Positions 2,993-44,804 of a stretch of DNA of 45,062 nucleotides are shown here, piece by piece (the stretch's first letter is position 1; each line of letters begins with the position of its first letter). The position numbers and the translations under genes were made by a program. Source of the stretch: Octopus bimaculoides. Its lineage: Eukaryota. Where the stretch lies: NCBI RefSeq assembly GCF_001194135.2, contig NC_068981.1, positions 23,937,131-23,982,192 on the forward strand. Reading direction: 5' to 3'. The notes below the pieces were generated by a model, which saw only the letters and a list, made by a program, of their open reading frames with translations, did not search any database and was not told the origin of the DNA.

Positions 2993-3212
2993 GGAGGCCG
3001 TGAGCTGGCAGAAACGTTAGCACGCCGAGCGAAGTGATTAGCGGTATTTTGTCAGTCTTTACGTTCTGAGTTCAAATTCCGCCCAAGGCGACTTTGCCTT
3101 TTATCCTTTCGGGGTCGATAAATTAAGTACCAGTTGCGTACTGAGGTCGATCTAATCGACTGCCCCTCCCCTAAAATTTCGGGTCTTGTGCCTAGAGTAG
3201 AAAAGATTATTA
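2993..3212 (+). mobile_element. tRNA-derived SINE (ggggtcgataaattaagtaccagttg family)
   Basis: Head gagctggcagaaacgttagc, B-box gagttcaaattcc, central cctttcggggtcgataaattaagtaccagttg. Further copies at 8806-9335 and 16838-17115. Confidence 0.85.
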
Positions 3213-8805: not shown

Positions 8806-9227
8806 TGTGGTGAGCTAGTAGAAACTTTACTAAGCCTGACAAAATGCTTAGTGTTATTTTGACCACCTTTACGTTCTGAGTCCAAATTCTGCCAAGGTCA
8901 TCTTTGCTTTTTTTATTCTTTCGGGGTCGATAAAATAAGTACCAGTTGAACACTGGGGTCGATGTAATCGACTTAGCGCCTCCTGTGAAATTTCAGTCCT
9001 TGTGCCTATAGCAGAAAGGACTATTAAGGGCGGCGAGCTGGGAGAATCGTTAGCACACCGGGCAAAATGCTTAGCGGCATTTCATCTGTCTTCATGTTCT
9101 GAGTTCAAATTCCAGTTTTCATCTCTTTTGGTGTCGATAAAATAAGTATTAGTTGATGACTACTGGGGTCGATCTAATCGACGTACCCACTTGCCTGTTC
9201 ATTACTGGCCATATGCCAAAATTTGAA

Positions 9228-11793: not shown

Positions 11794-12100
11794 CAGTGTT
11801 TCTCAACCGGGGTCCACATGACTCCTGACGGTCCACATGACCCCATTTAGTATTTTGTGGGGTTCACACAAGCAAAATACTAAATTGGGGATCCACAGTA
11901 GTATATTAAGGGTCCATGAAGGAATTCCGCTTCAGATGTATTTATTGTAAGAAGCAGCTAGGTTTCTCTCTCTAATGTGTTACATAGTTCAACTTGCGCA
12001 AAGTAATGTGCTGAAAACAAAATAGGAATTTTAAAAGAAATATTTATAAAACTAGTTTTTAAAGATCAAATGGCTATGGGGGTCCAACAAACGGTTGAGT
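11794..12100. mobile_element. hAT/Charlie-type MITE; right end degraded or overlapped by a SINE
   Basis: Left TIR cagtgtttctcaaccgggg preceded by gtctaaag (Charlie-like NTCTARAN target). Right remnant gggtcc...ggttgag at ~12080-12100. Confidence 0.65.
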
Positions 12101-12281
12101 GACTGTGTAGTAAGAAGCTTGCTTCCCAACCACATGGTTCTAGTTTCAGTCCCACTGCGTGGCACCTTGAGCAAGTGTCTTCTACTATAGCACGGGCCTA
12201 CCAAAGCCGCGAGTGGATTTGGCAGACGCGAAACTGAAAGAAGCCTGCTATGTATGTATATATTTTTTTAAGTATATATTT

Positions 12282-12313
<32 letters not shown>

Positions 12314-12505
12314 TTGTACTCCCCTCCATCACTTGACAACCGATGTTAGTGTGTTTACGTCCCCGTAACTTAGCAAAAGAGACCGACAGGATAGGTACTA
12401 GGCATACAAAGAATAAGTCCCGTGGTCGATTTGTTCGATTAAAGGCGGTGCTCCAGCATGGCCGCACTCAAATGACTGAAACAAGTTATAGAATAAAAGA
12501 ATATA
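12097..12505 (+). mobile_element. Full SINE: tRNA head, CORE-like domain, internal microsatellite, LINE-like tail
   Basis: gtgtagtaagaagcttgcttcc head, ggcaccttgagcaagtgtctt CORE-like segment, (GT)n at ~12250-12312, tail ggtgctccagcatggcc...tgactgaaac. Confidence 0.85.
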
Positions 12506-15734: not shown

Positions 15735-15778
<44 letters not shown>

Positions 15779-15789
15779 AACATATATAT

Positions 15790-15950
15790 ATATATATGAC
15801 GGGCGTCTTTCAGTTTCCATCTACCAAATCCACTCGCAAGGCTTTGATCGGCTCGAGGCTATAGTAAATGACAGTTGCCCAAGGTGCCCCGCAGTGGGAC
15901 TGAACTAGGGACCATGTGGTTGGGAAGCTTCTTACCACACAGCCATACCT
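15790..15950 (-). mobile_element. SINE 5' half (CORE-like family)
   Basis: Reverse complement matches 12100-12250 (ccttgggcaa, aaagccttgcgagtggatttggtagatggaaactgaaag). Confidence 0.85.
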
Positions 15951-16837: not shown

Positions 16838-17115
16838 GAGGAAAGTCGATTACATCGACCCCAGTGCGTGACTGGTACTTTATTTTTTGAACTAAGAATG
16901 CAAAGCCTTTAATGTTTATATATAATGATTTCAAATTTTGGCAGAAGGCCAGCAATTTCGACTTCAGTGCTTAACTGGTACTTATTTTATCAACCACGAA
17001 AGGATGAAAGACAATGTTGACCTCAGCGAAATTTGAACACCAGAACGTACAAACGGACGAAATGCCGCTAAGCATTTTGCCCCGCGTGGTAACGATTTTG
17101 CCAGCTCGCTACCTT
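16838..17115 (-). mobile_element. SINE plus a partial second copy (same family as 2993-3212)
   Basis: Reverse complement contains gagctggcaaaatcgttacc, gttcaaatttc, taagtaccagtt and ggggtcgatgtaatcgac. Confidence 0.8.
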
Positions 17116-18329
17116 AATGTTTATATATTTCCGATGAAAGAAAACCGTTGGAAAACAGTTTATAGCAGAGACTCCAGCTAAGAAGATCTGAAGAAGGAAT
17201 TGTAATTCCGAAATATCATCGGACTATAGATAACCAAATTACAACAGGTATATAGTCCATTTTTTGTTTTTTGTTTTATAGTGCATTGTTGTACCATTCT
17301 AAATTTTTATTTTTTATAATGGAAGCAGTTTTAGCAGCTAGCCACAAATCATTTTCATATACAACCAGAAACTACAAAAGAATACTTTACTGTTGAAATA
17401 AATGTTTCAATATTTATGCATTTTATCAGGTGTACAAAGTAAAGATAATTCAATTTATATAGGAAAGCCAAACTTTGGTGGGGAAAATCTCAGAAGAAAA
17501 ACAGCTTGAAAATAATTATAAATTTTAATTGAGATAATGGTCGCGACTATGTCTTTCTATTAAGGAAACAAAACTGCATGAAAAAAATAGAAAAATATTA
17601 AATTTTAAATGAGATAATGGCTCTTCCTTCGAAGCTACCTTAGTTTGTAGTAAAGAGTCAGCAAAATTTAAAATGGAGGTAACAAGAAAGAAATATCTGG
17701 GAGGGGACAGTTTTAGAAGTAGAAAATATACGCCTACCTAAATACAAATATATTCCAACATAAATATACATTTATGTGCAAATACATATGTTCATGTATT
17801 TTATATCATTCATCATACAGGTACCGTCATTATGTACAGGGGTCGGTTTGCTAATATTTTACAGTTTCCTCTTTGTTGTACTGCATGAATACAATGAGCC
17901 AGGCTCTTGTTTCTAGTCATTCTTTGATGTTGTCTACAAGTCTACAAGTATCTTTTAATGGCTTCTTGTTATTTGCCTCTCGACACTTCCTGTCAGTAAC
18001 TATTTTAAATGTATACATATAAATATGGAAAAAATCAAATAGGTACACACATAAATACTTACGTACATAGCTTTAATTACACGTACACATTGTGTGCGTG
18101 TTATATATACGCAAACATACATGTAAGTGGTAATATACAAACTGACACATCAATGGTTATATACACACATCCATATAAAAGGTAAAGTGAAGTTATAATC
18201 TAAAATTCGTTTAAAAGTAACAACGGAACATTTATGATGAGCGATTCAATACCGTGGGTAGAGCCTAGTTTATTGTAAAATTTGTGCTAACCGTGGCGCC
18301 AAGTTTTGCCAAATATATTATTCAAATGT

Positions 18330-18785: not shown

Positions 18786-19089
18786 TTCGTGTATATGTAT
18801 ATATATGTATGTCTATGTATTTATATGTATTTATGCATGTATGCATATATGTGTATATATATGGATCTCTATACGCAGATCAATGTGTCTATATATGGTT
18901 GTATACTCCTATATATTTGTTTTTTATGTATCTATCTTTGTGTATCGATGTATATATAAAAAATAATTGTGTATATGTATATGTAACTTTGATAACTTTG
19001 ATAGATTTCGGCCAATATAGGCCCAGGCCATGTATAACTCAATAGCATTACCTGGTGAAGCTTTTTAGCCTTATATGGGGCACCATAGC

Positions 19090-21275
19090 CCACTCTAGCA
19101 AAGAATTATTATTGTTGGAGACACATCCGGGTGTAGGAAGTTGATCCGGGATCTTTTGAAGAAATTTGTTCAGTGAACATCTGAATTTTATGGGATCCGT
19201 TCCCGTTTTGACGTATTTTGGTATGGTATTAAAGAGAGCTGGACCGGTTGAGGTAAATTAATTGCGACGTAATGTAATGAGTTCGAGTTTTGTAGTGGTC
19301 GGATAGCATGGGGGCCAAATCTCAGATGGATTTTAAAATTGATGCCAACATCATTTGTGCGCTATTGATGGAATATTTTCCACATAACAAATGATATAGC
19401 GCTCCCGGCGGCATTGGAGAGAGTAGAGATTGAGATTTTGAGTGGACCCCAATAATCAATGCCTCTCATGCCGTTTATCTTTCTTGTCATTGACCTCTGG
19501 AGTGCTTCTACTTTCATAATGCGTTGCTTCGTATGGGGGAACCACAGTGGGCAACAGTACTCAAGGGAGAGTCGGACAAAAGTAAAGCAGAGAAGGATGA
19601 TGGTGTAGGCATCTCTAGACCGGAAAGGTCTCAGCTTCCAGGAGCACATTTTGCGGGCCAAGTAAACCTTGCTGTTTATGTGGGAACTCCAGCTTAGATT
19701 GTTATCAACAATTACTCAAAGAGCTCTGGTGTTGTTGGATGACACTAGGGAGTCGCCCGAGGGAAGAGCATATGGTAATTTCAGAGTATCCTCTTTCTCA
19801 AAGTGGATCAAATAAAACTTACCTTCATTTAAAAGCATATTGATTTTTTCCGCCCGTTGGACAATAGAAAACAGATCTGACTGAAGGTATTTTCGGTCTC
19901 TCATGCCGTTTATGGCTTTCTGAAGTTTGGAATCATCTGCAAAGATTTTCAATGTAGAATGTTTGATGACATCTACTATGTCATTGATGTAAATAATGAA
20001 ACGGAGTGGGCCCAACACAGTACCTTGTAGGACACTACTACTGACTTTGGCTGAGCTGGATCGTATTTCCTCAAATACAACAGGTTGGGTTCTGTTCGTC
20101 AAGAAACACTTTATCCACTGCAGCAGCTTTTTACGGATTCAAATGTTGGATACTTTCTTCAGCAGGATTTTGTGGTCCACTCAATCAAATGCCAGGCTGA
20201 AATCAAGGTATATGACATCAGTGTTGGAGCCCTCTCCCAACGCTTTTAAGATGTCAATAAAATGGTGCAGAAGCTGCGACAGGCAGTTCCTGCCATCACG
20301 GAAACTATGCTGGTTGGGGTTCAGTAGATTGTTGCCTTCGAGGAAGTGAGTTATTCGCGGTCTCACCACCATCTCAAATACGTTAATGATATGAAAAGTG
20401 AGTGAGATCGGACAGTAATTCCCTGCAAGAGATTTGTTACCCTTTTTGATGACTGGAACGACAGACTGGGTAAGAAAATGACCAGGAATGCAGCCTGCAT
20501 GAAGTGAGTCTCTCCAGAGATCAACTTGAGGGGGTGCAATTATTTGATGTCGACACATCTTCAGGACAGTGGTAGGGAACTTATCGGGACCTAGTGCCGA
20601 GTTGTGCTTGATCTTATCTATTTCTGTTAGGATATCAGGAGCACTAAAGTTATGTCAGATATAGTTAGTTGAGGGTTTATATCACTGATACTAGCCAGAT
20701 CAACTGCATTAGGGTTACTGAAGACAGAGCAGTATTGTCTCAGCAGTATCTCGCACATGGATTTATGTTGTTGTTGTTTTTTTCAAACGAAAACAATATT
20801 TTGGGATTGAGTTTTATTTTCTCCATGGCCCAACTCTCTTCAGCTGCTGCTCTTTGACTGTTAATGATGATCATCATGCTTTTTTGGAGATCGTGTTTTT
20901 TGATTCGAGTGAAGAAATGGCAGCCGAATGAGTGCGTTGCTGCTGACAGTATTTAAATTGGTTGATTTTTCTTGTTATTTCTTTTTATTTTTCTGATATT
21001 TACTCTGCTATTTCTTGAGATTATGCACTTAGATTTGTATACTGATCTTAATAGAGTATGTTTTGCGCATATATTTCTCACAATATCTACAAATGTCTGC
21101 CATGATCAGTTAATGTTGAAGAGGGTGTGTGCATGCATGAAGGCCCAATCAACTTGTGAAAGATCATGATTGATCGCATCCCAGTCTGCGTTATGAACAT
21201 CCATAGTTTCAAATGGATAGACTGGAGAGATATCACTGGATTTGATCTTTGGGTGGTAGAATCTCAGGTCGCAGA
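19090..21275 (-). mobile_element. 5'-truncated, disabled CR1-clade LINE (RT and C-terminal region)
   Basis: ORF pieces YCPISLT..NQHSFR..DVIYLDFSLAFD, QGTVLGPL.FIIYIND..FADDSKL, VRLSLEYCCPLW.P, GPQLFNTIP..IPDQ. Confidence 0.92.
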
Positions 21276-26369: not shown

Positions 26370-27378
26370 AATCGAATGAATCTATTACACCTCTGATGAT
26401 TCGCAGAAATGAAATTAGTTGAGCTTTGCTGCTGATGTCTGTACTTCCATCGATTTGTAAGGACCTCAAGTTTTCAAGTTCATCTTTTGCTTCAGTGAAA
26501 TGTTTGCGGAGCAGATCATCAATGTCTCGCGAAATGTCTTGAATTTTACGAAAGATCGTGTGGGCAGACAAAGGAGTGGTCTTAATTTGTTTGACGGCTT
26601 CATCACTAATCATTGTGCCAACGGCGATCTCCAAGGCTAATAATGTTTTCGGCATCAGAATGTAGTCTTTTTCTTCTTTACCAAAAAGCTGGCAAACTTG
26701 TAACTAGCGATTTGAGCTTTCTCGGGAATAGAGTAAAATTTCTTCAACCTTTTTCATTGAATTTTAAAATTATTTTTACCATTTCAAAGTATTCTTTTAT
26801 CTTGTGCTTATGTTGCGGATGATTTGTTATCAAATGACGTTGAAGTTTCCTGGAAACCATCGCTTCATTTGAGAGTGTTGTTAAATAAACCATACAAAAA
26901 AGAACCGAGTTGTCTTTTTCCGATAATATAAAACCATATTGGATGCAATTTTCATTATATTTTTGTTTTGTTGAGGTGGACTTTTTGTTCTGGTGTTCGT
27001 CTTGTTTGCTATGAGTCTCTTTCTCATTTTTCTGAGGTCTCAATAAATATTTGTCCTAGTTTAAATCTAAAACTAAAAATCGATTAAAATTAACATAAAA
27101 TAATTTATGTAAATTATAAATATATCAAAAATTAAAAACTATTAGGTCTACTAAACAGACAATCCCGGTTTAAATGCAAAACTGCTGTTCGTCGTGTAAT
27201 GTAATTAATTTGTATTTACCGTATTTTACGATTTATATAATTAATTTATATTTACGCTTGAACTTTGCGAATGTTCTTCGATCGTTGTTTCCCGAAGATC
27301 CCGAAAATAATTTTCGCGACACTCCAGGAATCTATCACGGCACACCTTTGTTCGCAGCACACTGTTTCACAGACACTG
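26370..27378 (-). mobile_element. hAT (Charlie/Buster, ZBED5/SCAND3/FAM200-like) transposon, 5' half
   Basis: Left TIR cagtgtctgtgaaacagtgtgctgcg at 27378. BED-finger remnant QYGF..FCMVY.TLSNEAMV.RKLQRHL, and SLQIDGSTDISSKAQL. Homologous to 34166-35100. Confidence 0.88.
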
Positions 27379-30109: not shown

Positions 30110-30258
30110 AATGAAATAAAGTAGCTTGCTTACCAACCGCATGATTCCGGGTTCAGTCCCACTGCATGACACCTTGGGCAAGTGTTTTCTGCTGTAACTT
30201 CGAACCGACCAAAGCCTTGTAAGTGGATTTGGTAGACGGAAACTGAAAGAAATCTGTC

Positions 30259-30289
<31 letters not shown>

Positions 30290-30745
30290 TCCCCCAACAT
30301 CGCNNNNNNNNNNNNNNNNNNNNNNNNNNNNNNNNNNNNNNNNNNNNNNNNNNNNNNNNNNNNNNNNNNNNNNNNNNNNNNNNNNNNNNNNNNNNNNNNN
30401 NNNNNNNNNNNNNNNNNNNNNNNNNNNNNNNNNNNNNNNNNNNNNNNNNNNNNNNNNNNNNNNNNNNNNNNNNNNNNNNNNNNNNNNNNNNNNNNNNNNN
30501 NNNNNNNNNNNNNNNNNNNNNNNNNTGTGTGTGTGTGTGTGTGTGTGTGTGTGTCTCGTCAACATCACTTGCCAACCGTTGCTGGTGTGTTTACGTTCCC
30601 GTGACTTAGCGGTTCGGCAAAAGAGACCGATAGAATAAGTACTAGGCTTACAAAGAATAAGTCCTGGGGTCGATTTGCTCGACTAAAGGCGGTGCCCCAG
30701 CATAGCCGCAGTCAAATGACTGAAATAAGCAAAAGAATGAAAGAA
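30110..30745 (+). mobile_element. SINE (CORE-like family) spanning an N gap at its internal microsatellite
   Basis: ggttcagtccc B-box, caccttgggcaagtgtttt, aaagccttgtaagtggatttggtagacggaaactgaaag; tail ggtgccccagcatagcc..tgactgaaa. Confidence 0.88.
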
Positions 30746-31211
30746 TATAAGATTATATATATATATGAGTGTGTGTGTGTATGTGTGTGTGTGTGTATTA
30801 TTACAAATAGATATATATATATGTATACATGTATGTATGCATGTATGTATGTACGTATGTATGAATGCTAGTAGGTAGATAGGTAGGTAGGTAGGTCGGT
30901 CGGTCGGTCGGTATGTAAGTGGGTTTCTGCAATATGACTGAATGAAATTACTTTACGAGAGTATGTACTCTGAATATGATAAAATCTCGTAAATGTAACG
31001 TGATGCGTTGAAAGCATCAATCAACTGAGATTAAGCAATTGATAAACAGAAAGTCTCTTTAAGTAGGGTTAGAACATACGAACTGCACGCAAAGCTGGAA
31101 CTATTCTTTGAAACGGATGAAACACGATGCCACCGTATGCCCGCAGTTGCAGAACTGAAACAAATAAAAGATACACGCGCGCACACACACACTCACTCAC
31201 ACATGTATACG

Positions 31212-34165: not shown

Positions 34166-36260
34166 GCCTGCCAAATGTGTGCTGCAGCACAGCGGTGTGC
34201 TGTGATAGATTTCTGGACTCCCATGAAAAATATTTTCGAGTTTTTCGGGAAAAAACAATCCAAGAACATTCGCAAAGTTCGAGCGAAAATATAAATTAAT
34301 TATATAATTCTTAAAATACGGTAAATATAAATTAATTACATTACACGACGAACAGCAGTTTTGCATTTAAACCGGGATTGTCTGTAAGTAAATCGTTTAG
34401 TAGTCCTAGTAGTTTTAATTTTTGATTTATTTATAATTTACATACATTATTTTATGTTGATTTTAATCGAATTTTAGTTGGACAAATTTTTATTGAGAAC
34501 TCATCAAAACGAAAATATAGTGAAAATTACATCCAATATGGTTTTATATTATCAGAAAAAGACAACTCGGTTCCTTTTTGTATGATTTGTTAAACAACAC
34601 TCTCAAATGAAGCGATGGTTCCCAGAAAACTACAGCAGCATTTAATAACAAATCCTCTGCAACATAAGGACAAGATAAAAGAACACTTTTGAGATGCTAA
34701 AAAATAATTTTAAGATTCAATGAAAAAGGCTGAAGAAATTTCACTCAATTCTCGAGAAAGCTCAAATCGCTAGTTATAAGATTGCCCAGTTTTGGGCAAA
34801 GAAGAAAAAAAGCACTTTCTGATACCGAAAACATTATTTTACCAGCCTTGGAGATCATCGTTGGTATAATGATTAGTGACGAAGCCGTCAAACAAATTAA
34901 AGCCATGCCTTTGTCTGCCCACACGATCTTTCGTAAAATTCAAGACATTGCGTGAGACATTGGTAATCAGCTCCGCAAACATTTCACTTTAGCAAAACAT
35001 GAACTTGAAAATTTGTGGTGCTTACAAATCGATGAAAGTACAGACATTTGCAAGAAAACTCAACTAATTTCATTTCTCCGAATAGTCAGTGGTGGTAAAA
35101 TCATAAGTCAGTTTTTCTTTTGTTGTGATTTGAAGGAAAGAACGACAAGAGAAGATGTGTTTAACCTGGTAAATCAAATTGTCGTATTGAGAGGGATGCA
35201 GTGGCAAACTTGTATTAGCGTTTGCATTGATGGCGCTCCACCCATGCAGGGTCGAAAACAGGGCTTCGTGGTTAATGTATTACAAACAAAAAAAATAGTT
35301 AAAACTGTACATCGCATGATTCACCACGAAGTTTTGGTGTCAAAATCTCTAGCTGATGATCTCCTGAAGACGATGGACAACGTTGTTAAAATGGTGAATT
35401 ACATAAAATCGTATTCCCTACGGTGCAGACTTTTTGCATCCTTATAAATTCTGATTTTAAGTGTTTACTGCTTCATACAGAAGTGCGATGGCTTTCTAAA
35501 GGAAAAGTGCTCTCTGGATTTATCTCTTTGCGAACTGAAATAATAGGTTTCATCGATGCAGAAAATTCAGGATTTGAATTTCTTAACGATGATAATTGGT
35601 GTTTGGAAGTAGCATTTCTCAACGATCTGTTTATGAAGTTGAAAGTTTTAAATTTGAATCTGCAAGAAAATATTACAATTCCAGAAAAAAAATTAATGTC
35701 TTTCGCCGACAAGTTAAAACTGAGGATAAGGAAAGTTAAAAACTCGCAATTTGATTGCTTACCAGTCGTAGAAGCTTTTCCAAACAAATTTAAAATTTTG
35801 TCAGAAGTGCAGAAGACAGTAGAAAACCTCTCTGTATCATTTTCTAAGTATTTTCCATCACTTGATTATCAAATGTACGAGTGGGTCATCAATCCTGTTC
35901 GCAAGATACGACAGTACACACCTGCCATTAACATTAACAGAAGAAAAATTTAAGAGACTTGAAAAACGATCCTGAGCACAAAGCCTTATTTTCTGTTCTA
36001 GAATTGTCAGAACTTTGGATTTCGTTTTTGAACTAATATCCTCGATTAGCTACTACAAACGTTAAAACTCTGTTGGCCTTTGGATCATCGTATCTTTGCA
36101 AAGTAGGCAGCTCTGTGCTTATGAAAGTAAAATAAATAAAAGGGAACGATTACAGATGGTAGACGAGGAGCTACGTATTTGTTTATCTAATTTCGAGCCA
36201 CGCTTTCACAAAATTCTTTCTCAAAATCGATTGCATCCTTTTTACTAAAAACATTATTAT
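34166..36260 (+). mobile_element. hAT (Charlie/Buster-like) transposon with disabled transposase; right TIR not found
   Basis: LQIDESTD, CIDGAPPMQG, HRMIHHEVL and LLHTEVRWLSKG motifs; degenerate left TIR at ~34166; stops and frameshifts. Confidence 0.93.
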
Positions 36261-39334: not shown

Positions 39335-40193
39335 TTGGGTCATCCCATAAATAATGCGGATTTTTTTATACTTCTTTTATTTTTCAAAATTAAAATAAAC
39401 AAACTTCTTTTTTAATCTAAAATATAGTCTCCTTAATTTTCTACAATGCTCTTCCATTTACCTGGTAGACTTGCAAGGCCCCTCTTCAAAAATTCACTTG
39501 TCTGCAACGGAAAATACTCCTCCACTACTGTTCTGACCTCGTCTACGGAACTCATATTTTTACCGTCCAAATGATTTCGAAGACTGTGTAATAAATGATA
39601 ATCAGATGGGGCAATGACCAGCGAATACGATGAGTGTGATATCGTTTCCCATTGAAATTGTTCCAGCCTTTGGAATTTCATCCTCGCAGAATGTGGCCGA
39701 GCATTATCCTGAAGTGGGGCGGGGGTAAAAATCCAAACTTTTCTGCTAGTCCCTCAACAATTACGATGCGATTTTGTTCCACAAGTGTTTGTAGAACATC
39801 CTCGTCGAGCTCTACATATCTTCCAGGACGAGGCTTGTCTTCTAGACTGTAGTTTCCGGCTCGGAATTTCTGGAACCACAGTTGAGATTGGCTTCCGCTT
39901 ATTATCCGATCTCTATATACTGCATTAATATTCCTCGCACTCTACGTTGTTGTTGCTTGTATTGAACTCATAAAGCAAAATATGCCGAATATAGTCCTTT
40001 GTCACGTCCATTATAGTTTGGGAAAATTACTGTTGAAATTGAACCGCGCTCTTCAAAATTTGCACTAAAAATAATTACAAGGTAAAATTACGACCTACTT
40101 TTATAACAAGTTGGTGCAGGTAGTTTATCCCGTCCCCCGCCGACTTCTAGTTCATGCAATTGAAAAAACCGCATTACTTTTGGGATGACCCAG
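39335..40193 (-). mobile_element. Internally deleted mariner element with both TIRs and TA target duplication
   Basis: TIRs ttgggtcatcccataaataatgcgg and ccgcattacttttgggatgacccag, each flanked by TA. Minus-strand WFQKFRAGNYSLEDKPRPGR, QDNARPH and IAPSDYHL motifs. Confidence 0.92.
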
Positions 40194-42958: not shown

Positions 42959-43081
<123 letters not shown>

Positions 43082-43251
43082 TTCAGTTGCAGGATTCGTT
43101 AGAATCTAGGTGTATCAAAAGCAAGTCAGCAGGGTTGGCTGGGTACGTAGTATTAAAACTACAACTTGATGAAACTTACAGTATATATACATACATACAT
43201 ACATACATACACGCACACACACATACACACATATATATATACATACACACA

Positions 43252-43290
<39 letters not shown>

Positions 43291-43293
<3 letters not shown>

Positions 43294-43644
43294 ATTGTCA
43301 GTAACTGTGATTAGGGCGTTAAGAAACTCCTACATTGCCAGAAATCAGAGCTAAACCACTCTAATGCTGTAGCTAACGCATATGAATAAAAACAGGGACC
43401 ATAGTCGTCCGAAAAGTGCCGATCGAGAATTCTTAATTCTGGCTTAACTGATGAGGCAATGGAAATTGCCGAAACTGACGTTAGTATCAACAATTCTCAA
43501 TCGGCACTTTTCGGATGGTTATGGTCCCTGTTAGTGCATATGTTTTCACTCATGTGCGTTAACTACAGCATTAGAGCCGTTTAGCTCTTATTTCTGGCAA
43601 TGTAGGTCTTTCCTTACACTCTAGTCACATTTAGTGTCAATTAT
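43291..43644. repeat. Fold-back: arms 43291-43431 and 43492-43644, 60-nt loop
   Basis: Inner ~103 bp differ at 11 positions plus a ~12-nt insertion in the right arm; outer ~40 bp are more diverged. Confidence 0.92.
43444..43490 (+). ncRNA. Minimal type I hammerhead ribozyme (Penelope-type)
   Basis: CUGAUGA 43448-54; stem II ggcaat/attgcc with GGAA tetraloop; GAAA 43471-74; near-palindromic stem III acugacguuagu; GUA cleavage triplet ending 43486; stem I uuaa/ucaa with one mismatch. Confidence 0.82.
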
Positions 43645-43714
43645 AATTCTTTTTGGTGAAATATTGCAAGCTGTTGTTTGTATTCATTATGTATATATAT
43701 ATAAGTAGGAATCT

Positions 43715-44455
43715 CTAACATACAAAGGGAAAAACGTTGCACAATACTAAAAGAAATAGACAAAGCCGTAAATTTCGCAGAATTGCCTCCTTTGAATAAA
43801 GTACACAAAGAAGAAAGAGTGACGTGGGCAAAAAAGATATATGAAGAGACACATTACAAATGTAGTTTTTACTGACTAGTGCAGAGTAACATTAGATGGA
43901 CCTGATGGATGGGCAAGGATGCGGGTGTTAAATGGAAAAAGTCAGCCAACACGATTAAGAAGACAGCAGGGTGGTGGAGGAATCATGTTTTGGGCTGGCT
44001 AGAGTTGGAGGAGACATTATAGGCACATTTAAGTTTGCTGATGGAGTCAATATAAATGCTGATAATTATTGCAAGTTTCTAGATGACAGCTTCTTCCATT
44101 GGTACAAGTCAACAGCGCGAAGTTTCCCGTTAAAGAGCATATTTAGGCATGATAATGCCCCTTCACACTCTGCCAAACTCACTAGTAACCATTTAGCTAA
44201 GAAAGGTTTCAAAGAACATAAGATAATGGAATGCTCCCACCCAATCTCCAGATCTCAATAAACAAGTTGAGGTCAGTTTTTTAAAAAGATGTATGTTTTA
44301 ATGGTAAATAATATTCAAACAAGGATTTACTATGGGAAGCAATAAAAACTGCTGCAAGTAATATTAAAAGTAAGATTGTTGAGAAATTGACAAAATCAGT
44401 TGATGAGAGAATATCTAAAGTTATAGATGGTAAAGGAGGCTATATAAAAATGTAA
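43715..44455 (+). mobile_element. Tc1/Tc3-type (DD34E-like) transposase remnant
   Basis: PPLNKVHKEERVTWAK, VVFTD*CRVTLDGPDGW, FRHDNAPSH, degenerate SPDLN and RISKVIDGKGGYI. Confidence 0.85.
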
Positions 44456-44804
44456 AATATATACATAATTGTTTGTAAATATAATTATATGGTGGAAGAT
44501 ATGCGTATATATTAATGTTCTGGTTATGTAATGTTCTATATGTAAATCACATGACATGTAGTTTATATAATACTTGTTCACATGCATAATAAAAAGCAAC
44601 ACTTTATAAACATGTTTTTCTTCATTTCCGCTTTAACTATACACCGATTTAGACGAAAAGTATTACAGATGTGGGGCCCATAATCCTACATATACCCTAA
44701 ATATTTCAAGAAAATCGGACAAGGGGTTTTGATTTTATTGAGGAATGATAGACTTACATAATAAAAGGAAACACAGTGTATGTATGTATGTATATATATT
44801 TTTT

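What the first reader, a model, noticed from the sequence alone, without database searches (positions are those of the whole stretch)
43291..43644. Fold-back element whose loop is a minimal hammerhead ribozyme
Seen: 141/153-bp inverted arms (inner part ~89% identical) enclose 60 nt, of which 43444-43490 is a hammerhead with an intact core: CUGAUGA, 6-bp stem II with a GNRA loop, GAAA, near-palindromic stem III and a GUA site. Its own stem I is short and has one mismatch. Established: Penelope-like elements carry minimal type I hammerheads with palindromic stem III that can act as dimers, and they often have inverted pLTR duplications. Inference: in a plus-strand transcript the long arms would act as an extension of helix I, clamping the ribozyme. 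Cleavage after 43486 would open the loop and leave ~140 bp of dsRNA with ribozyme-generated ends. This could be a self-processing hairpin RNA or a non-autonomous PLE-dependent element distinct from tandem retrozymes.
Basis: partly seen in the sequence, partly recalled or inferred. Interest (0 to 1): 0.85.

Follow-up and report, generated by a model that had tools for sequence, protein, structure and literature searches.

The report
Inverted retroelement fragments enclosing a hammerhead
A genuine minimal hammerhead ribozyme motif lies between two decayed inverted ~150-bp copies in an octopus genome, and it is most likely the ordinary head-to-head scar of a Penelope-like retroelement insertion, not a purpose-built self-cleaving hairpin.

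Summary
Two inverted arms (43291-43432/37 and 43487/92-43644; 84.5% identical, one 12-nt indel) enclose a complete type I minimal hammerhead. It has CUGAUGA, a 6-bp helix II with a GGAA loop, GAAA, a 10-nt palindromic helix III, and GUA with cleavage after 43486. Core plus a 6-bp helix II is expected 0.0055 times per shuffled window.

The window is octopod DNA full of decayed transposons. The ribozyme matches the Penelope-like-element (PLE) minimal, dimer-dependent type. The arms do not clamp helix I. Their inner extension pairs across the cleavage site, and the catalytic fold costs about 12 kcal/mol more than the predicted fold. Arm differences show no wobble bias (6 G·U versus 7 A·C).

My best explanation (confidence 0.55) is two head-to-head, 5'-truncated retro-copies of a PLE terminus or pLTR-derived element made in one integration next to a microsatellite. 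Only the plus copy reaches past the ribozyme. This architecture is already described for PLEs.

I found no other copy in the window, in about 62 kb of other fetched DNA (about 41 kb of it Octopus sinensis), or in the public collections. Family-level tests therefore remain open. It is a new member of a known kind, of low to moderate interest.

The parts
43187..43291 (.). (ACAC/ATAC)n microsatellite that ends exactly at the left boundary of the fold-back
   Evidence: TRF rows 43187/43189-43291; sequence. PLE insertions are reported to favour microsatellites (PMC8557442).
43291..43437 (-). Left arm. I interpret it as a minus-oriented, 5'-truncated retro-copy of the segment that lies downstream of the ribozyme in the right arm. 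Its inner end is uncertain (43432-43443).
   Evidence: Alignment A1; base-by-base comparison of rc(43425-43437) = ATTAAGAATTCTC with 43486-43498 = ATCAACAATTCTC gives 11/13 matches (sequence).
43438..43443 (.). Junction zone of uncertain assignment. It is either the last bases of the inverted copy (complementary to 43480-43485 with two C/T transitions) or the first bases of the direct copy.
   Evidence: MFE pairs 43439-43443 with 43480-43484; 4 matches, 2 transitions and 1 transversion over 7 positions, read directly.
43444..43490 (+). Type I minimal hammerhead ribozyme motif. Helix I is 43444-47/43487-90; core CUGAUGA is 43448-54; helix II with the GGAA loop is 43455-70; GAAA is 43471-74; palindromic helix III is 43475-84; U16.1-A17 are 43485-86; predicted cleavage is after 43486.
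   Evidence: Sequence; descriptor scan and shuffles; helix II probability 0.97-1.0; sub-threshold Rfam Hammerhead_3 hit; dimer cofold.
43487..43644 (+). Right arm. This is the part of the direct (plus-oriented) copy from the ribozyme cleavage site to the shared outer terminus ...GTGTCAATTAT. It carries a 12-nt insertion at 43533-43544 relative to the left arm.
   Evidence: Alignment A1; substitution table.
43459..43584 (+). 41-codon ORF whose ATG lies in helix II. GAA-ACN of the core is read in the same register as in Poseidon_Ac, where the PLE ORF starts in helix II. Here it is closed by a stop that both arms share, so it is probably not functional.
   Evidence: the ORF listing; six-frame translation; Poseidon_Ac sequence and text.

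Best explanation
The 354-bp fold-back is the scar of one retrotransposition event of a hammerhead-bearing Penelope-like element (PLE) terminus, or of a short non-autonomous element derived from a PLE pseudo-LTR. Two cDNA copies that start at the same 3' terminus (...CAATTAT) were laid down head to head, next to a (CA)n microsatellite and inside or beside an old Tc1-like transposon.

The minus-oriented copy (left arm) stops at, or within 7 nt of, the ribozyme cleavage site. The plus-oriented copy runs about 45-55 nt further and so is the only one that includes the ribozyme. That is why the ribozyme ends up in the 'loop'.

The two copies were identical at insertion and have since decayed neutrally. 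They are 15.5% divergent with one 12-nt indel. That is roughly 25 My using the octopus calibration quoted in PMC13282606.

Shown: the anatomy, the PLE-type character of the ribozyme, the lack of structural support for a clamp, and the neutral-looking decay. Inferred: the integration mechanism. It could be priming on both strands of the cut target, as shown in vitro for a Poseidon PLE, or snap-back self-priming of one cDNA.

The ribozyme would need a second copy to cleave, because its helix III forms properly only in a dimer. At this single-ribozyme locus it is probably inert or at most weakly active.
For: - The ribozyme has the traits listed for PLE minimal hammerheads: type I, helix II of 6 bp, helix I of 4 bp, G10.1-C11.1 and a palindromic helix III (PMC4209133).
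- It is predicted to dimerise through a 12-bp helix III.
- PLE insertions are described as heavily 5'-truncated, often with an inverted 5'-truncated copy immediately adjacent that forms inverted repeats. They show a microsatellite insertion bias and carry the hammerhead near the 3' end (PMC8557442).
- A purified Poseidon PLE protein cleaves and extends both DNA strands. It starts reverse transcription 111-118 bp into the ORF, whose hammerhead cut lies 26 bp after the start codon, so about 85-92 nt past the cut (PMC11167929). The distance here is 158 nt, the same order of magnitude.
- Cervera and de la Peña report that most min-HHRs are single motifs, probably from truncated PLEs, and that some pairs lie 100-700 bp apart on opposite strands.
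- Both arms end at the same outer nucleotide, and the left end abuts a (CA)n array.
- Arm differences look neutral: 13 transitions, 9 transversions, and 6 G·U versus 7 A·C.
- The left copy keeps T where the right has C43488. The ancestral helix I was therefore a perfect UUAA/UUAA, and the mismatch arose after insertion.
- The catalytic fold is disfavoured by 12 kcal/mol within the fold-back.
- There are no tandem units.
- Penelope-like elements are an abundant, long-active transposon order in octopus genomes (PMC13282606 and PMC8967140).
- The window is octopod.
Against: - I found no PLE reverse transcriptase or GIY-YIG remnant in the window or in the one Octopus sinensis locus tested, L001 (tblastn with Poseidon_Ac).
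- I found no second copy of the arms or of this ribozyme anywhere I could search. Homology of the arms to a PLE terminus is therefore inferred, not shown.
- The outer ends are flanked by TA, which is also compatible with a Tc1/mariner-type MITE.
- The ORF that starts in helix II is closed by a stop shared by both arms, so the source was not a Poseidon-like coding 5' end in that frame.
- The ribozyme core is fully intact despite about 8% decay per arm. I estimate the chance of that at about 0.1 under neutrality.
Confidence: 0.55

Rival explanations
1. The fold-back itself is the mobile unit. It would be a palindromic non-autonomous element, either MITE-like and moved by a DNA transposase or hairpin-shaped and PLE-dependent, whose loop carries the hammerhead as a family feature. 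This is essentially the reader's proposal.
For: The element is compact at 354 bp, with arms reaching its very ends and a TA on each side. It forms a very stable hairpin. It lies next to a Tc1-like transposase pseudogene.
Against: No other copy was found in the window or in about 62 kb of other fetched DNA, about 41 kb of it Octopus sinensis. The arms show no similarity to the region after the neighbouring transposase gene, where its terminal repeat would lie. TA flanks are weak evidence in 34% GC DNA. Hammerheads of this type are known from retroelements, not DNA transposons (PMC4209133). The hairpin disfavours the catalytic fold.
Confidence: 0.15
2. A pre-existing palindromic MITE received a very short, 5'-truncated retro-copy of a hammerhead RNA in its centre. 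The copy would end at the ribozyme-cleaved 3' end (A17), so the arms would be unrelated to the ribozyme's source element.
For: The ribozyme ends (A43486) within 5 nt of where the right arm clearly begins. Helix I is weak at 4 positions with one mismatch, as expected if the downstream sequence were unrelated.
Against: The inverted-repeat alignment continues through 43487-43491 and probably to 43480. The left arm therefore appears to contain a copy of the helix I 3' strand and part of helix III. The ancestral helix I, reconstructed from the left arm, is a perfect UUAA/UUAA. The studied PLE initiates reverse transcription internally, not at the ribozyme-cleaved end.
Confidence: 0.08
3. A host-used or element-used self-processing hairpin RNA. 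Transcription of the plus strand would give a long hairpin whose loop is opened by the hammerhead. This would leave about 140 bp of dsRNA with 5'-OH and 2',3'-cyclic phosphate ends, for example as a small-RNA precursor.
For: The geometry would allow it if the RNA is made and the ribozyme is active. The core is intact. Long inverted repeats are known endo-siRNA sources in Drosophila (PMC5392987, listed).
Against: The catalytic fold is disfavoured by 12 kcal/mol, and the cleavage site is buried in the extended arm helix. Helix III needs a second ribozyme. The arms carry 22 mismatches and an indel with no wobble bias. The element sits in a field of dead transposons, and I have no evidence of transcription.
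Confidence: 0.04
4. The hammerhead resemblance is a chance match inside an unrelated inverted repeat.
For: Rfam models stay below their gathering scores.
Against: Core + 6-bp helix II + GAAA is expected 0.0055 times per window. That is before counting G10.1-C11.1, A15.1-U16.1, the palindromic helix III, H17 = A and helix I. A second candidate minimal hammerhead lies in the same window.
Confidence: 0.01

Closest known systems
Penelope-like element (PLE) termini / pseudo-LTR fragments with minimal type I hammerheads (Cervera & de la Peña 2014, PMC4209133; Craig et al. 2021, PMC8557442; Frangieh et al. 2024, PMC11167929)
   Same: The ribozyme is type I with a long helix II, a short helix I and a palindromic helix III that implies dimers. 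The copies are heavily 5'-truncated, with an inverted 5'-truncated copy directly adjacent. The insertion is next to a microsatellite. The ribozyme lies 100-200 nt from the copy's 3' terminus. An ATG sits in helix II in the same register as in Poseidon_Ac.
   Different: I could not retrieve an RT/GIY-YIG ORF or a pLTR homologue. [quoted passage not shown] Helix III keeps a 3-bp stem with a 4-nt loop instead of being absent. Only one of the two inverted copies includes the ribozyme.
Metazoan non-LTR retrozymes (Cervera & de la Peña 2020, PMC7229834; Li, Clavereau & Pollet 2026 preprint, 10.64898/2026.07.22.740005)
   Same: Both have a type I hammerhead, low GC and no coding capacity. The distance from ribozyme to terminus would fit a unit of about 200 nt. 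Retrozymes are proposed to derive from PLE pLTRs, and many genomic copies are dispersed monomers.
   Different: Here there is no head-to-tail tandem and only one ribozyme. Excision of a monomer and circularisation are therefore impossible from this locus. The inverted duplication is not a retrozyme feature.
Schistosoma Sm-alpha / Sj-alpha SINE-like hammerhead elements (reviewed in PMC6765202)
   Same: Both are short, dispersed, non-coding repeats that carry a type I hammerhead.
   Different: Those elements have a promoter followed by the ribozyme and are not fold-backs. ARAGORN finds no tRNA-like sequence here.
Palindromic MITEs with near-full-length inverted arms (own knowledge, e.g. zebrafish Angel)
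   Same: Both are about 350 bp, almost entirely two inverted arms with a small loop and possible TA flanks.
   Different: To my knowledge, MITEs do not carry hammerheads. Multi-copy status and target-site duplication are not established here.

Membership tests
Hammerhead ribozyme, type I minimal (PLE-type) | Conserved core C3 U4 G5 A6 N7 G8 A9 ... G12 A13 A14 | tested here: met
   CUGAUGA at 43448-54 and GAA at 43471-73.
Hammerhead ribozyme, type I minimal (PLE-type) | Helix II closed by G10.1-C11.1 | tested here: met
   GGCAAU/AUUGCC, 6 bp, loop GGAA; pair probabilities 0.97-1.0.
Hammerhead ribozyme, type I minimal (PLE-type) | A15.1-U16.1 and a cleavage-site nucleotide H17 that is not G | tested here: met
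   A43474, U43485, A43486.
Hammerhead ribozyme, type I minimal (PLE-type) | Short, palindromic helix III that allows dimer formation | tested here: met
   CUGACGUUAG at 43475-84. The cofold forms a 12-bp intermolecular helix at -36.1 versus 2 x -11.2 kcal/mol.
Hammerhead ribozyme, type I minimal (PLE-type) | Open helix I of about 4-6 bp | tested here: inconclusive
   UUAA/UCAA has 3 pairs and a C·A mismatch, with ensemble probability 0.00. The left-arm copy has T at the mismatch position, which implies an ancestral perfect 4-bp helix.
Hammerhead ribozyme, type I minimal (PLE-type) | Rfam covariance model at gathering score | tested here: not met
   Best hit is Hammerhead_3 at 22.6 bits against 48.5. 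Published surveys of minimal PLE variants relied on RNAmotif descriptors instead (PMC4209133).
Hammerhead ribozyme, type I minimal (PLE-type) | Self-cleavage | not testable with these tools
   Needs in vitro transcription of monomer, dimer and fold-back constructs.
Penelope-like element insertion | RT plus GIY-YIG endonuclease ORF | tested here: not met
   tblastn of Poseidon_Ac protein against the window gives nothing below E = 7. The locus can only be a terminal fragment or a non-autonomous derivative.
Penelope-like element insertion | 5'-truncated copy with an inverted 5'-truncated copy immediately adjacent | tested here: met
   The architecture is rc(X) - ribozyme - X with a shared outer terminus. 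The feature is described in PMC8557442.
Penelope-like element insertion | Insertion at a microsatellite | tested here: met
   The (ACAC)n array ends at 43291. It is present on one side only, so the support is modest.
Penelope-like element insertion | Sequence homology of the copy to the terminus or pLTR of an autonomous PLE of the same genome | not testable with these tools
   No octopus genome or repeat library is searchable at the DNA level; all pattern scans were empty.
Non-LTR retrozyme | Head-to-tail tandem units, each with a hammerhead | tested here: not met
   TRF finds only microsatellites. Self-BLAST finds only the inverted arm. The resemblance of the right flank to the ribozyme region is not significant, p = 0.1-0.3.
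Non-LTR retrozyme | Expression as linear and circular monomer RNA | not testable with these tools
   No transcriptome data are available.
MITE | Terminal inverted repeats | tested here: met
   The arms reach both ends.
MITE | Target-site duplication | tested here: inconclusive
   TA on both sides (43292-93, 43642-43) is palindromic and common in AT-rich DNA.
MITE | Many dispersed copies of the whole unit | tested here: inconclusive
   No copy in 45 kb of window or about 62 kb of other fetched DNA, about 41 kb of it Octopus sinensis. The genome-wide count is not testable.
Hairpin RNA (endo-siRNA precursor) locus | Selection to keep the arms paired in the transcript | tested here: not met
   Among 13 transitions, 6 give G·U and 7 give A·C in the plus transcript. 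There are also 9 transversions and a 12-nt indel. Power is low.

The most novel reading that the evidence does not exclude
Fold-backs of this kind could be a reproducible product class and not one-off scars. They would be long hairpin RNAs whose loop is a dimer-dependent hammerhead. Two transcripts would kiss through the palindromic helix III and cut each other's loops, releasing about 140-bp dsRNA with 5'-OH and 2',3'-cyclic phosphate ends that feeds small-RNA silencing of the parent PLE family. A weaker version is that the inverted copy ends exactly at the cleavage site because it is a run-off cDNA of a self-cleaved RNA. That would be fossil evidence that PLE hammerheads cleave in vivo, which RNA-seq failed to show for Poseidon_Ac (PMC11167929).
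Probability: 0.06. Interest if true: 0.7.

Novelty: new member of a known kind. Interest (0 to 1): 0.25.

Why it matters
If my reading is right, the locus is an ordinary by-product of PLE-type integration. It adds an octopod example of a minimal, dimer-type hammerhead to a motif class already known to be very widespread in animal genomes.

Its practical value is as a caution. A ribozyme sitting in the loop of a long hairpin can arise simply because one of two head-to-head truncated retro-copies runs past the ribozyme and the other does not.

One point deserves a genome-wide look. The inverted copy stops at, or within 7 nt of, the predicted cleavage site. If 5' ends of truncated copies pile up at that position across a genome, that would be indirect evidence that these weak ribozymes cleave in vivo. 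That question is still open for PLEs.

Tried and rejected
- Other copies in the window: BLASTN of the element with word size 7 found only the self and inverted matches.
- Public collections: exact-pattern scans for the ribozyme and for conserved arm blocks all returned 0. These covered IMG/VR, JGI metagenomes and GTDB genomes.
- Six-frame trick: a concatenated six-frame translation of the element searched against 5.8 billion predicted proteins, to catch spurious ORFs from other copies, gave no hit at E <= 1.
- Window ORFs as anchors: ten window ORFs are not in the protein collection. The window's own contig and its orthologues therefore could not be fetched.
- Fishing in other DNA: about 62 kb reached through LINE homologues (L001-L004; only L001 and L002, about 41 kb, are Octopus sinensis) held no copy and no hammerhead motif.
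- Tc1-like transposase search: this was meant to recover an empty site. The best homologues are at most 51% identical, so none was close enough. It did show that the pseudogene lacks codons 1-77 where the fold-back sits.
- Tandem-unit idea: I asked whether the right flank (43645-43684) is a decayed second ribozyme, which would imply a tandem retrozyme unit. The alignment score is not significant, p = 0.1-0.3, so I dropped it.
- Arms versus the neighbouring Tc1-like element: there is no similarity beyond a 25-nt, 80% match at 44463-44487. I treated that as chance.
- tRNA-like or SINE origin: ARAGORN found nothing.
- Literature supplements: none with PLE hammerhead alignments or octopus PLE consensus sequences are held. 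Lünse et al. 2017 is not held either.

Full report
**What is there**

The window is 45 kb of 34% GC eukaryotic DNA. It has seven N gaps, many microsatellites and decayed transposon ORFs. A LINE reverse-transcriptase fragment at 19.7-20.7 kb has its best named relatives in Octopus sinensis (73-75% identity) and Argonauta hians. The LINE DNA is 81-86% identical to an O. sinensis chromosome copy. The source is therefore an octopod.

At 43291-43644 the inverted repeat is real.
- The repeat finder gives 104-nt arms at 84%.
- A gapped alignment extends the arms to 43291-43432(37) and 43487(92)-43644. It shows 22 substitutions in 142 positions and one 12-nt indel.
- The RNA would fold at -193 kcal/mol, z = -23.

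- CUGAUGA lies at 43448-54.
- Helix II is GGCAAU/AUUGCC with a GGAA loop.
- GAAA lies at 43471-74.
- The palindrome CUGACGUUAG forms helix III.
- U16.1-A17 are 43485-86, so cleavage falls after 43486.
- Helix I is 4 positions long, UUAA/UCAA, with one C·A mismatch.

A descriptor of core + helix II + GAAA hits 0.03 times per dinucleotide-shuffled window. With a helix II of at least 6 bp it hits 0.0055 times. Rfam models stay below threshold: Hammerhead_3 scores 22.6 bits against 48.5. I would expect this for minimal PLE-type variants, which were discovered with descriptors and not covariance models (PMC4209133).

**What kind of hammerhead**

Cervera and de la Peña describe PLE hammerheads as type I. 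They have a longer than usual helix II (6-8 bp), a short helix I (4-5 bp), a conserved G10.1-C11.1 and a palindromic helix III region that implies action as dimers. In vitro activity is low. [quoted passage not shown]

Cofolding two copies gives -36.1 kcal/mol against 2 x -11.2. The dimer has a 12-bp intermolecular helix III and both helix II hairpins intact. As a monomer the catalytic secondary structure is 9.7 kcal/mol above the minimum free energy.

**Do the arms clamp helix I?**

No, as far as secondary-structure prediction can tell. Between the solid part of the arms (GAGAAUU 43425-31 / AAUUCUC 43492-98) and helix I lie 12 nt on the 5' side and 1 nt on the 3' side. Those 12 nt are themselves a decayed complement of 43480-43490.

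The predicted fold therefore continues the arm helix across the cleavage site. It pairs U43433-A43490, U43434-A43489, A43436-U43487, U43437-A43486 and CUGGC 43439-43 with GUUAG 43480-84. In the ensemble helix I has probability 0.00 and helix III 0.01. Enforcing the catalytic fold costs +12.0 kcal/mol in the whole fold-back or an inner 126-nt clamp. It costs +13.8 for the plus copy alone and +9.7 for the isolated ribozyme. Tertiary contacts are not modelled, so this is not proof. Still, the arms compete with the active fold and do not stabilise it.

**Is the hairpin under selection?**

The arms differ by 13 transitions and 9 transversions. Of the transitions, 6 leave a G·U and 7 an A·C in the plus-strand transcript. 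This is what neutral decay of two once-identical copies gives, although the power of the test is low.

The left arm carries T where the right arm has C43488. The common ancestor therefore had a perfect UUAA/UUAA helix I, and the mismatch arose after the duplication. The ribozyme has begun to decay at this locus.

Divergence is 15.5%, which is a Jukes-Cantor distance of 0.17 between arms and about 0.087 per arm. With the calibration quoted for octopus repeats (JC 0.09 is about 25 My; PMC13282606), the event is roughly 25 My old. This date is an inference.

**Best explanation**

PLE insertions are characteristically heavily 5'-truncated. They often have an inverted 5'-truncated copy immediately adjacent, which forms inverted repeats. 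They carry the hammerhead near the 3' end and favour microsatellites (PMC8557442).

A purified Poseidon PLE protein cleaves and extends both strands of the target. It starts reverse transcription 111-118 bp into an ORF whose hammerhead cut lies 26 bp after the start codon, so about 85-92 nt past the cut. Its ORF begins in helix II (PMC11167929).

The locus here matches this picture.
- Both arms share the same outer terminus (...CAATTAT).
- The left end abuts an (AC)n array.
- The ribozyme lies 158 nt from the terminus.
- An ATG sits in helix II in the same register relative to GAA-ACN as in Poseidon_Ac. The ORF is closed by a stop shared by both arms, however.

The ribozyme is in the 'loop' simply because the plus copy extends about 50 nt further than the minus copy. 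Snap-back self-priming of one cDNA would give the same architecture, and I cannot separate the two routes.

PLEs are abundant and long-active in octopus genomes. A second candidate minimal hammerhead at 17188-17217 has the extra nucleotide after A9, G10.1-C11.1 and a palindromic AUAU, and it lies in the same window.

**What is missing**

I could not show that the arms are homologous to a PLE terminus. The window and the one Octopus sinensis locus tested (L001) contain no PLE ORF remnant. No other copy of the element was found in the window or in about 62 kb of other fetched DNA, about 41 kb of it Octopus sinensis. It was also absent from predicted proteins and from the searchable DNA collections. 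None of these collections holds octopus genomes at the DNA level. I therefore give 0.55 to the PLE-scar reading.

**Rivals**

| Reading | Confidence | Main point against |
|---|---|---|
| A fold-back mobile family with the ribozyme as a designed loop | 0.15 | The ribozyme type belongs to retroelements, and the hairpin disfavours catalysis |
| A palindromic MITE hit centrally by a short ribozyme-ending retro-copy | 0.08 | The left arm appears to copy the helix I 3' strand and part of helix III |
| A functional self-processing hairpin RNA | 0.04 | The cleavage site is buried, a partner ribozyme is needed, and the arm decay looks neutral |
| Chance | 0.01 | The statistics above |

The TA on each side (43292-93, 43642-43) is compatible with a Tc1/mariner-type MITE but is weak evidence in AT-rich DNA. 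A tandem retrozyme reading fails here. There is no head-to-tail unit, and the faint resemblance of the right flank to the ribozyme region is not significant.

**Context**

Immediately to the right, 43675-44452 is a frameshifted Tc1-like transposase pseudogene. It corresponds to residues 78-337 of 337-aa homologues that carry DDE_3 and HTH_Tnp_Tc3_2 domains. The fold-back and the microsatellites occupy the place of the missing N-terminal 77 codons. The insertion therefore hit, or truncated, an older DNA transposon.

**Verdict**

The PLE connection is plausible. The proposed clamp and self-processing hairpin mechanism is not supported. The thing is best filed as a new octopod member of a known kind: PLE-type minimal hammerheads in truncated, inverted retro-copies.

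One detail is worth following genome-wide. The inverted copy ends at, or within 7 nt of, the predicted cleavage site.

Noticed in passing
window 17185-17220 (+): Second candidate minimal hammerhead. It reads CUGAAGA (17188-94), an unpaired A, helix II GGAAU/AUUCC with loop UGUA, GAAA (17210-13), palindromic AUAU and C17 (cleavage after 17217), with helix I GAU/AUC of only 3 bp. An 8-bp stem-loop GGACUAUA...UAUAGUCC follows. It shows no similarity to the fold-back arms, no inverted repeat nearby and no Rfam hit at E <= 10. It lies about 55 bp after a SINE-like repeat.
   Followed up: partly
window 42963-43081 and 43187-43291: A (TG)59 array and an (AC/ATAC)n array in inverted orientation flank about 105 bp of unique sequence. 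Together they give a 138-nt, 77% inverted repeat directly left of the fold-back. I do not know whether this reflects a second inverted duplication.
   Followed up: no
window 43675-44452 (+): Tc1-like transposase pseudogene with frameshifts and stops. It matches residues 78-337 of 337-aa homologues at 51% identity or less. The N-terminal 77 codons are missing, and the fold-back plus microsatellites sit in their place.
   Followed up: partly
window 43459-43584 (+): The ATG inside helix II opens a 41-codon ORF that reads GAA-ACU of the ribozyme core as Glu-Thr. This is the same register as in Poseidon_Ac, whose ORF starts in helix II. The stop is shared by both arms, and no homologue was found.
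   Followed up: partly
window 18993-20941 (-): LINE reverse-transcriptase remnant with weak Pfam RVT_1 matches. It is 81-86% identical at the DNA level to a copy on O. sinensis chromosome CM016864.1.
   Followed up: partly
window 2995-3210, 8809-9185, 16940-17119; also 12097-12504, 15778-15946, 30119-30748: Several copies of two short interspersed repeat families that also occur many times in the O. sinensis loci L001 and L002. They are probably octopus SINEs.
   Followed up: no
window 39436-39941 (-): Mariner-type transposase fragment. Pfam HTH_48 (Mos1 HTH) matches at E = 1.4e-6 on 39681-39941.
   Followed up: partly
window 26371-27055 (-) and 34426-36245 (+): Two related sets of open frames, up to 187 codons long, share peptide motifs such as ...ENCIQYGFILSEKDNSV... 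They have no Pfam match and are probably two copies of an unidentified transposon.
   Followed up: no
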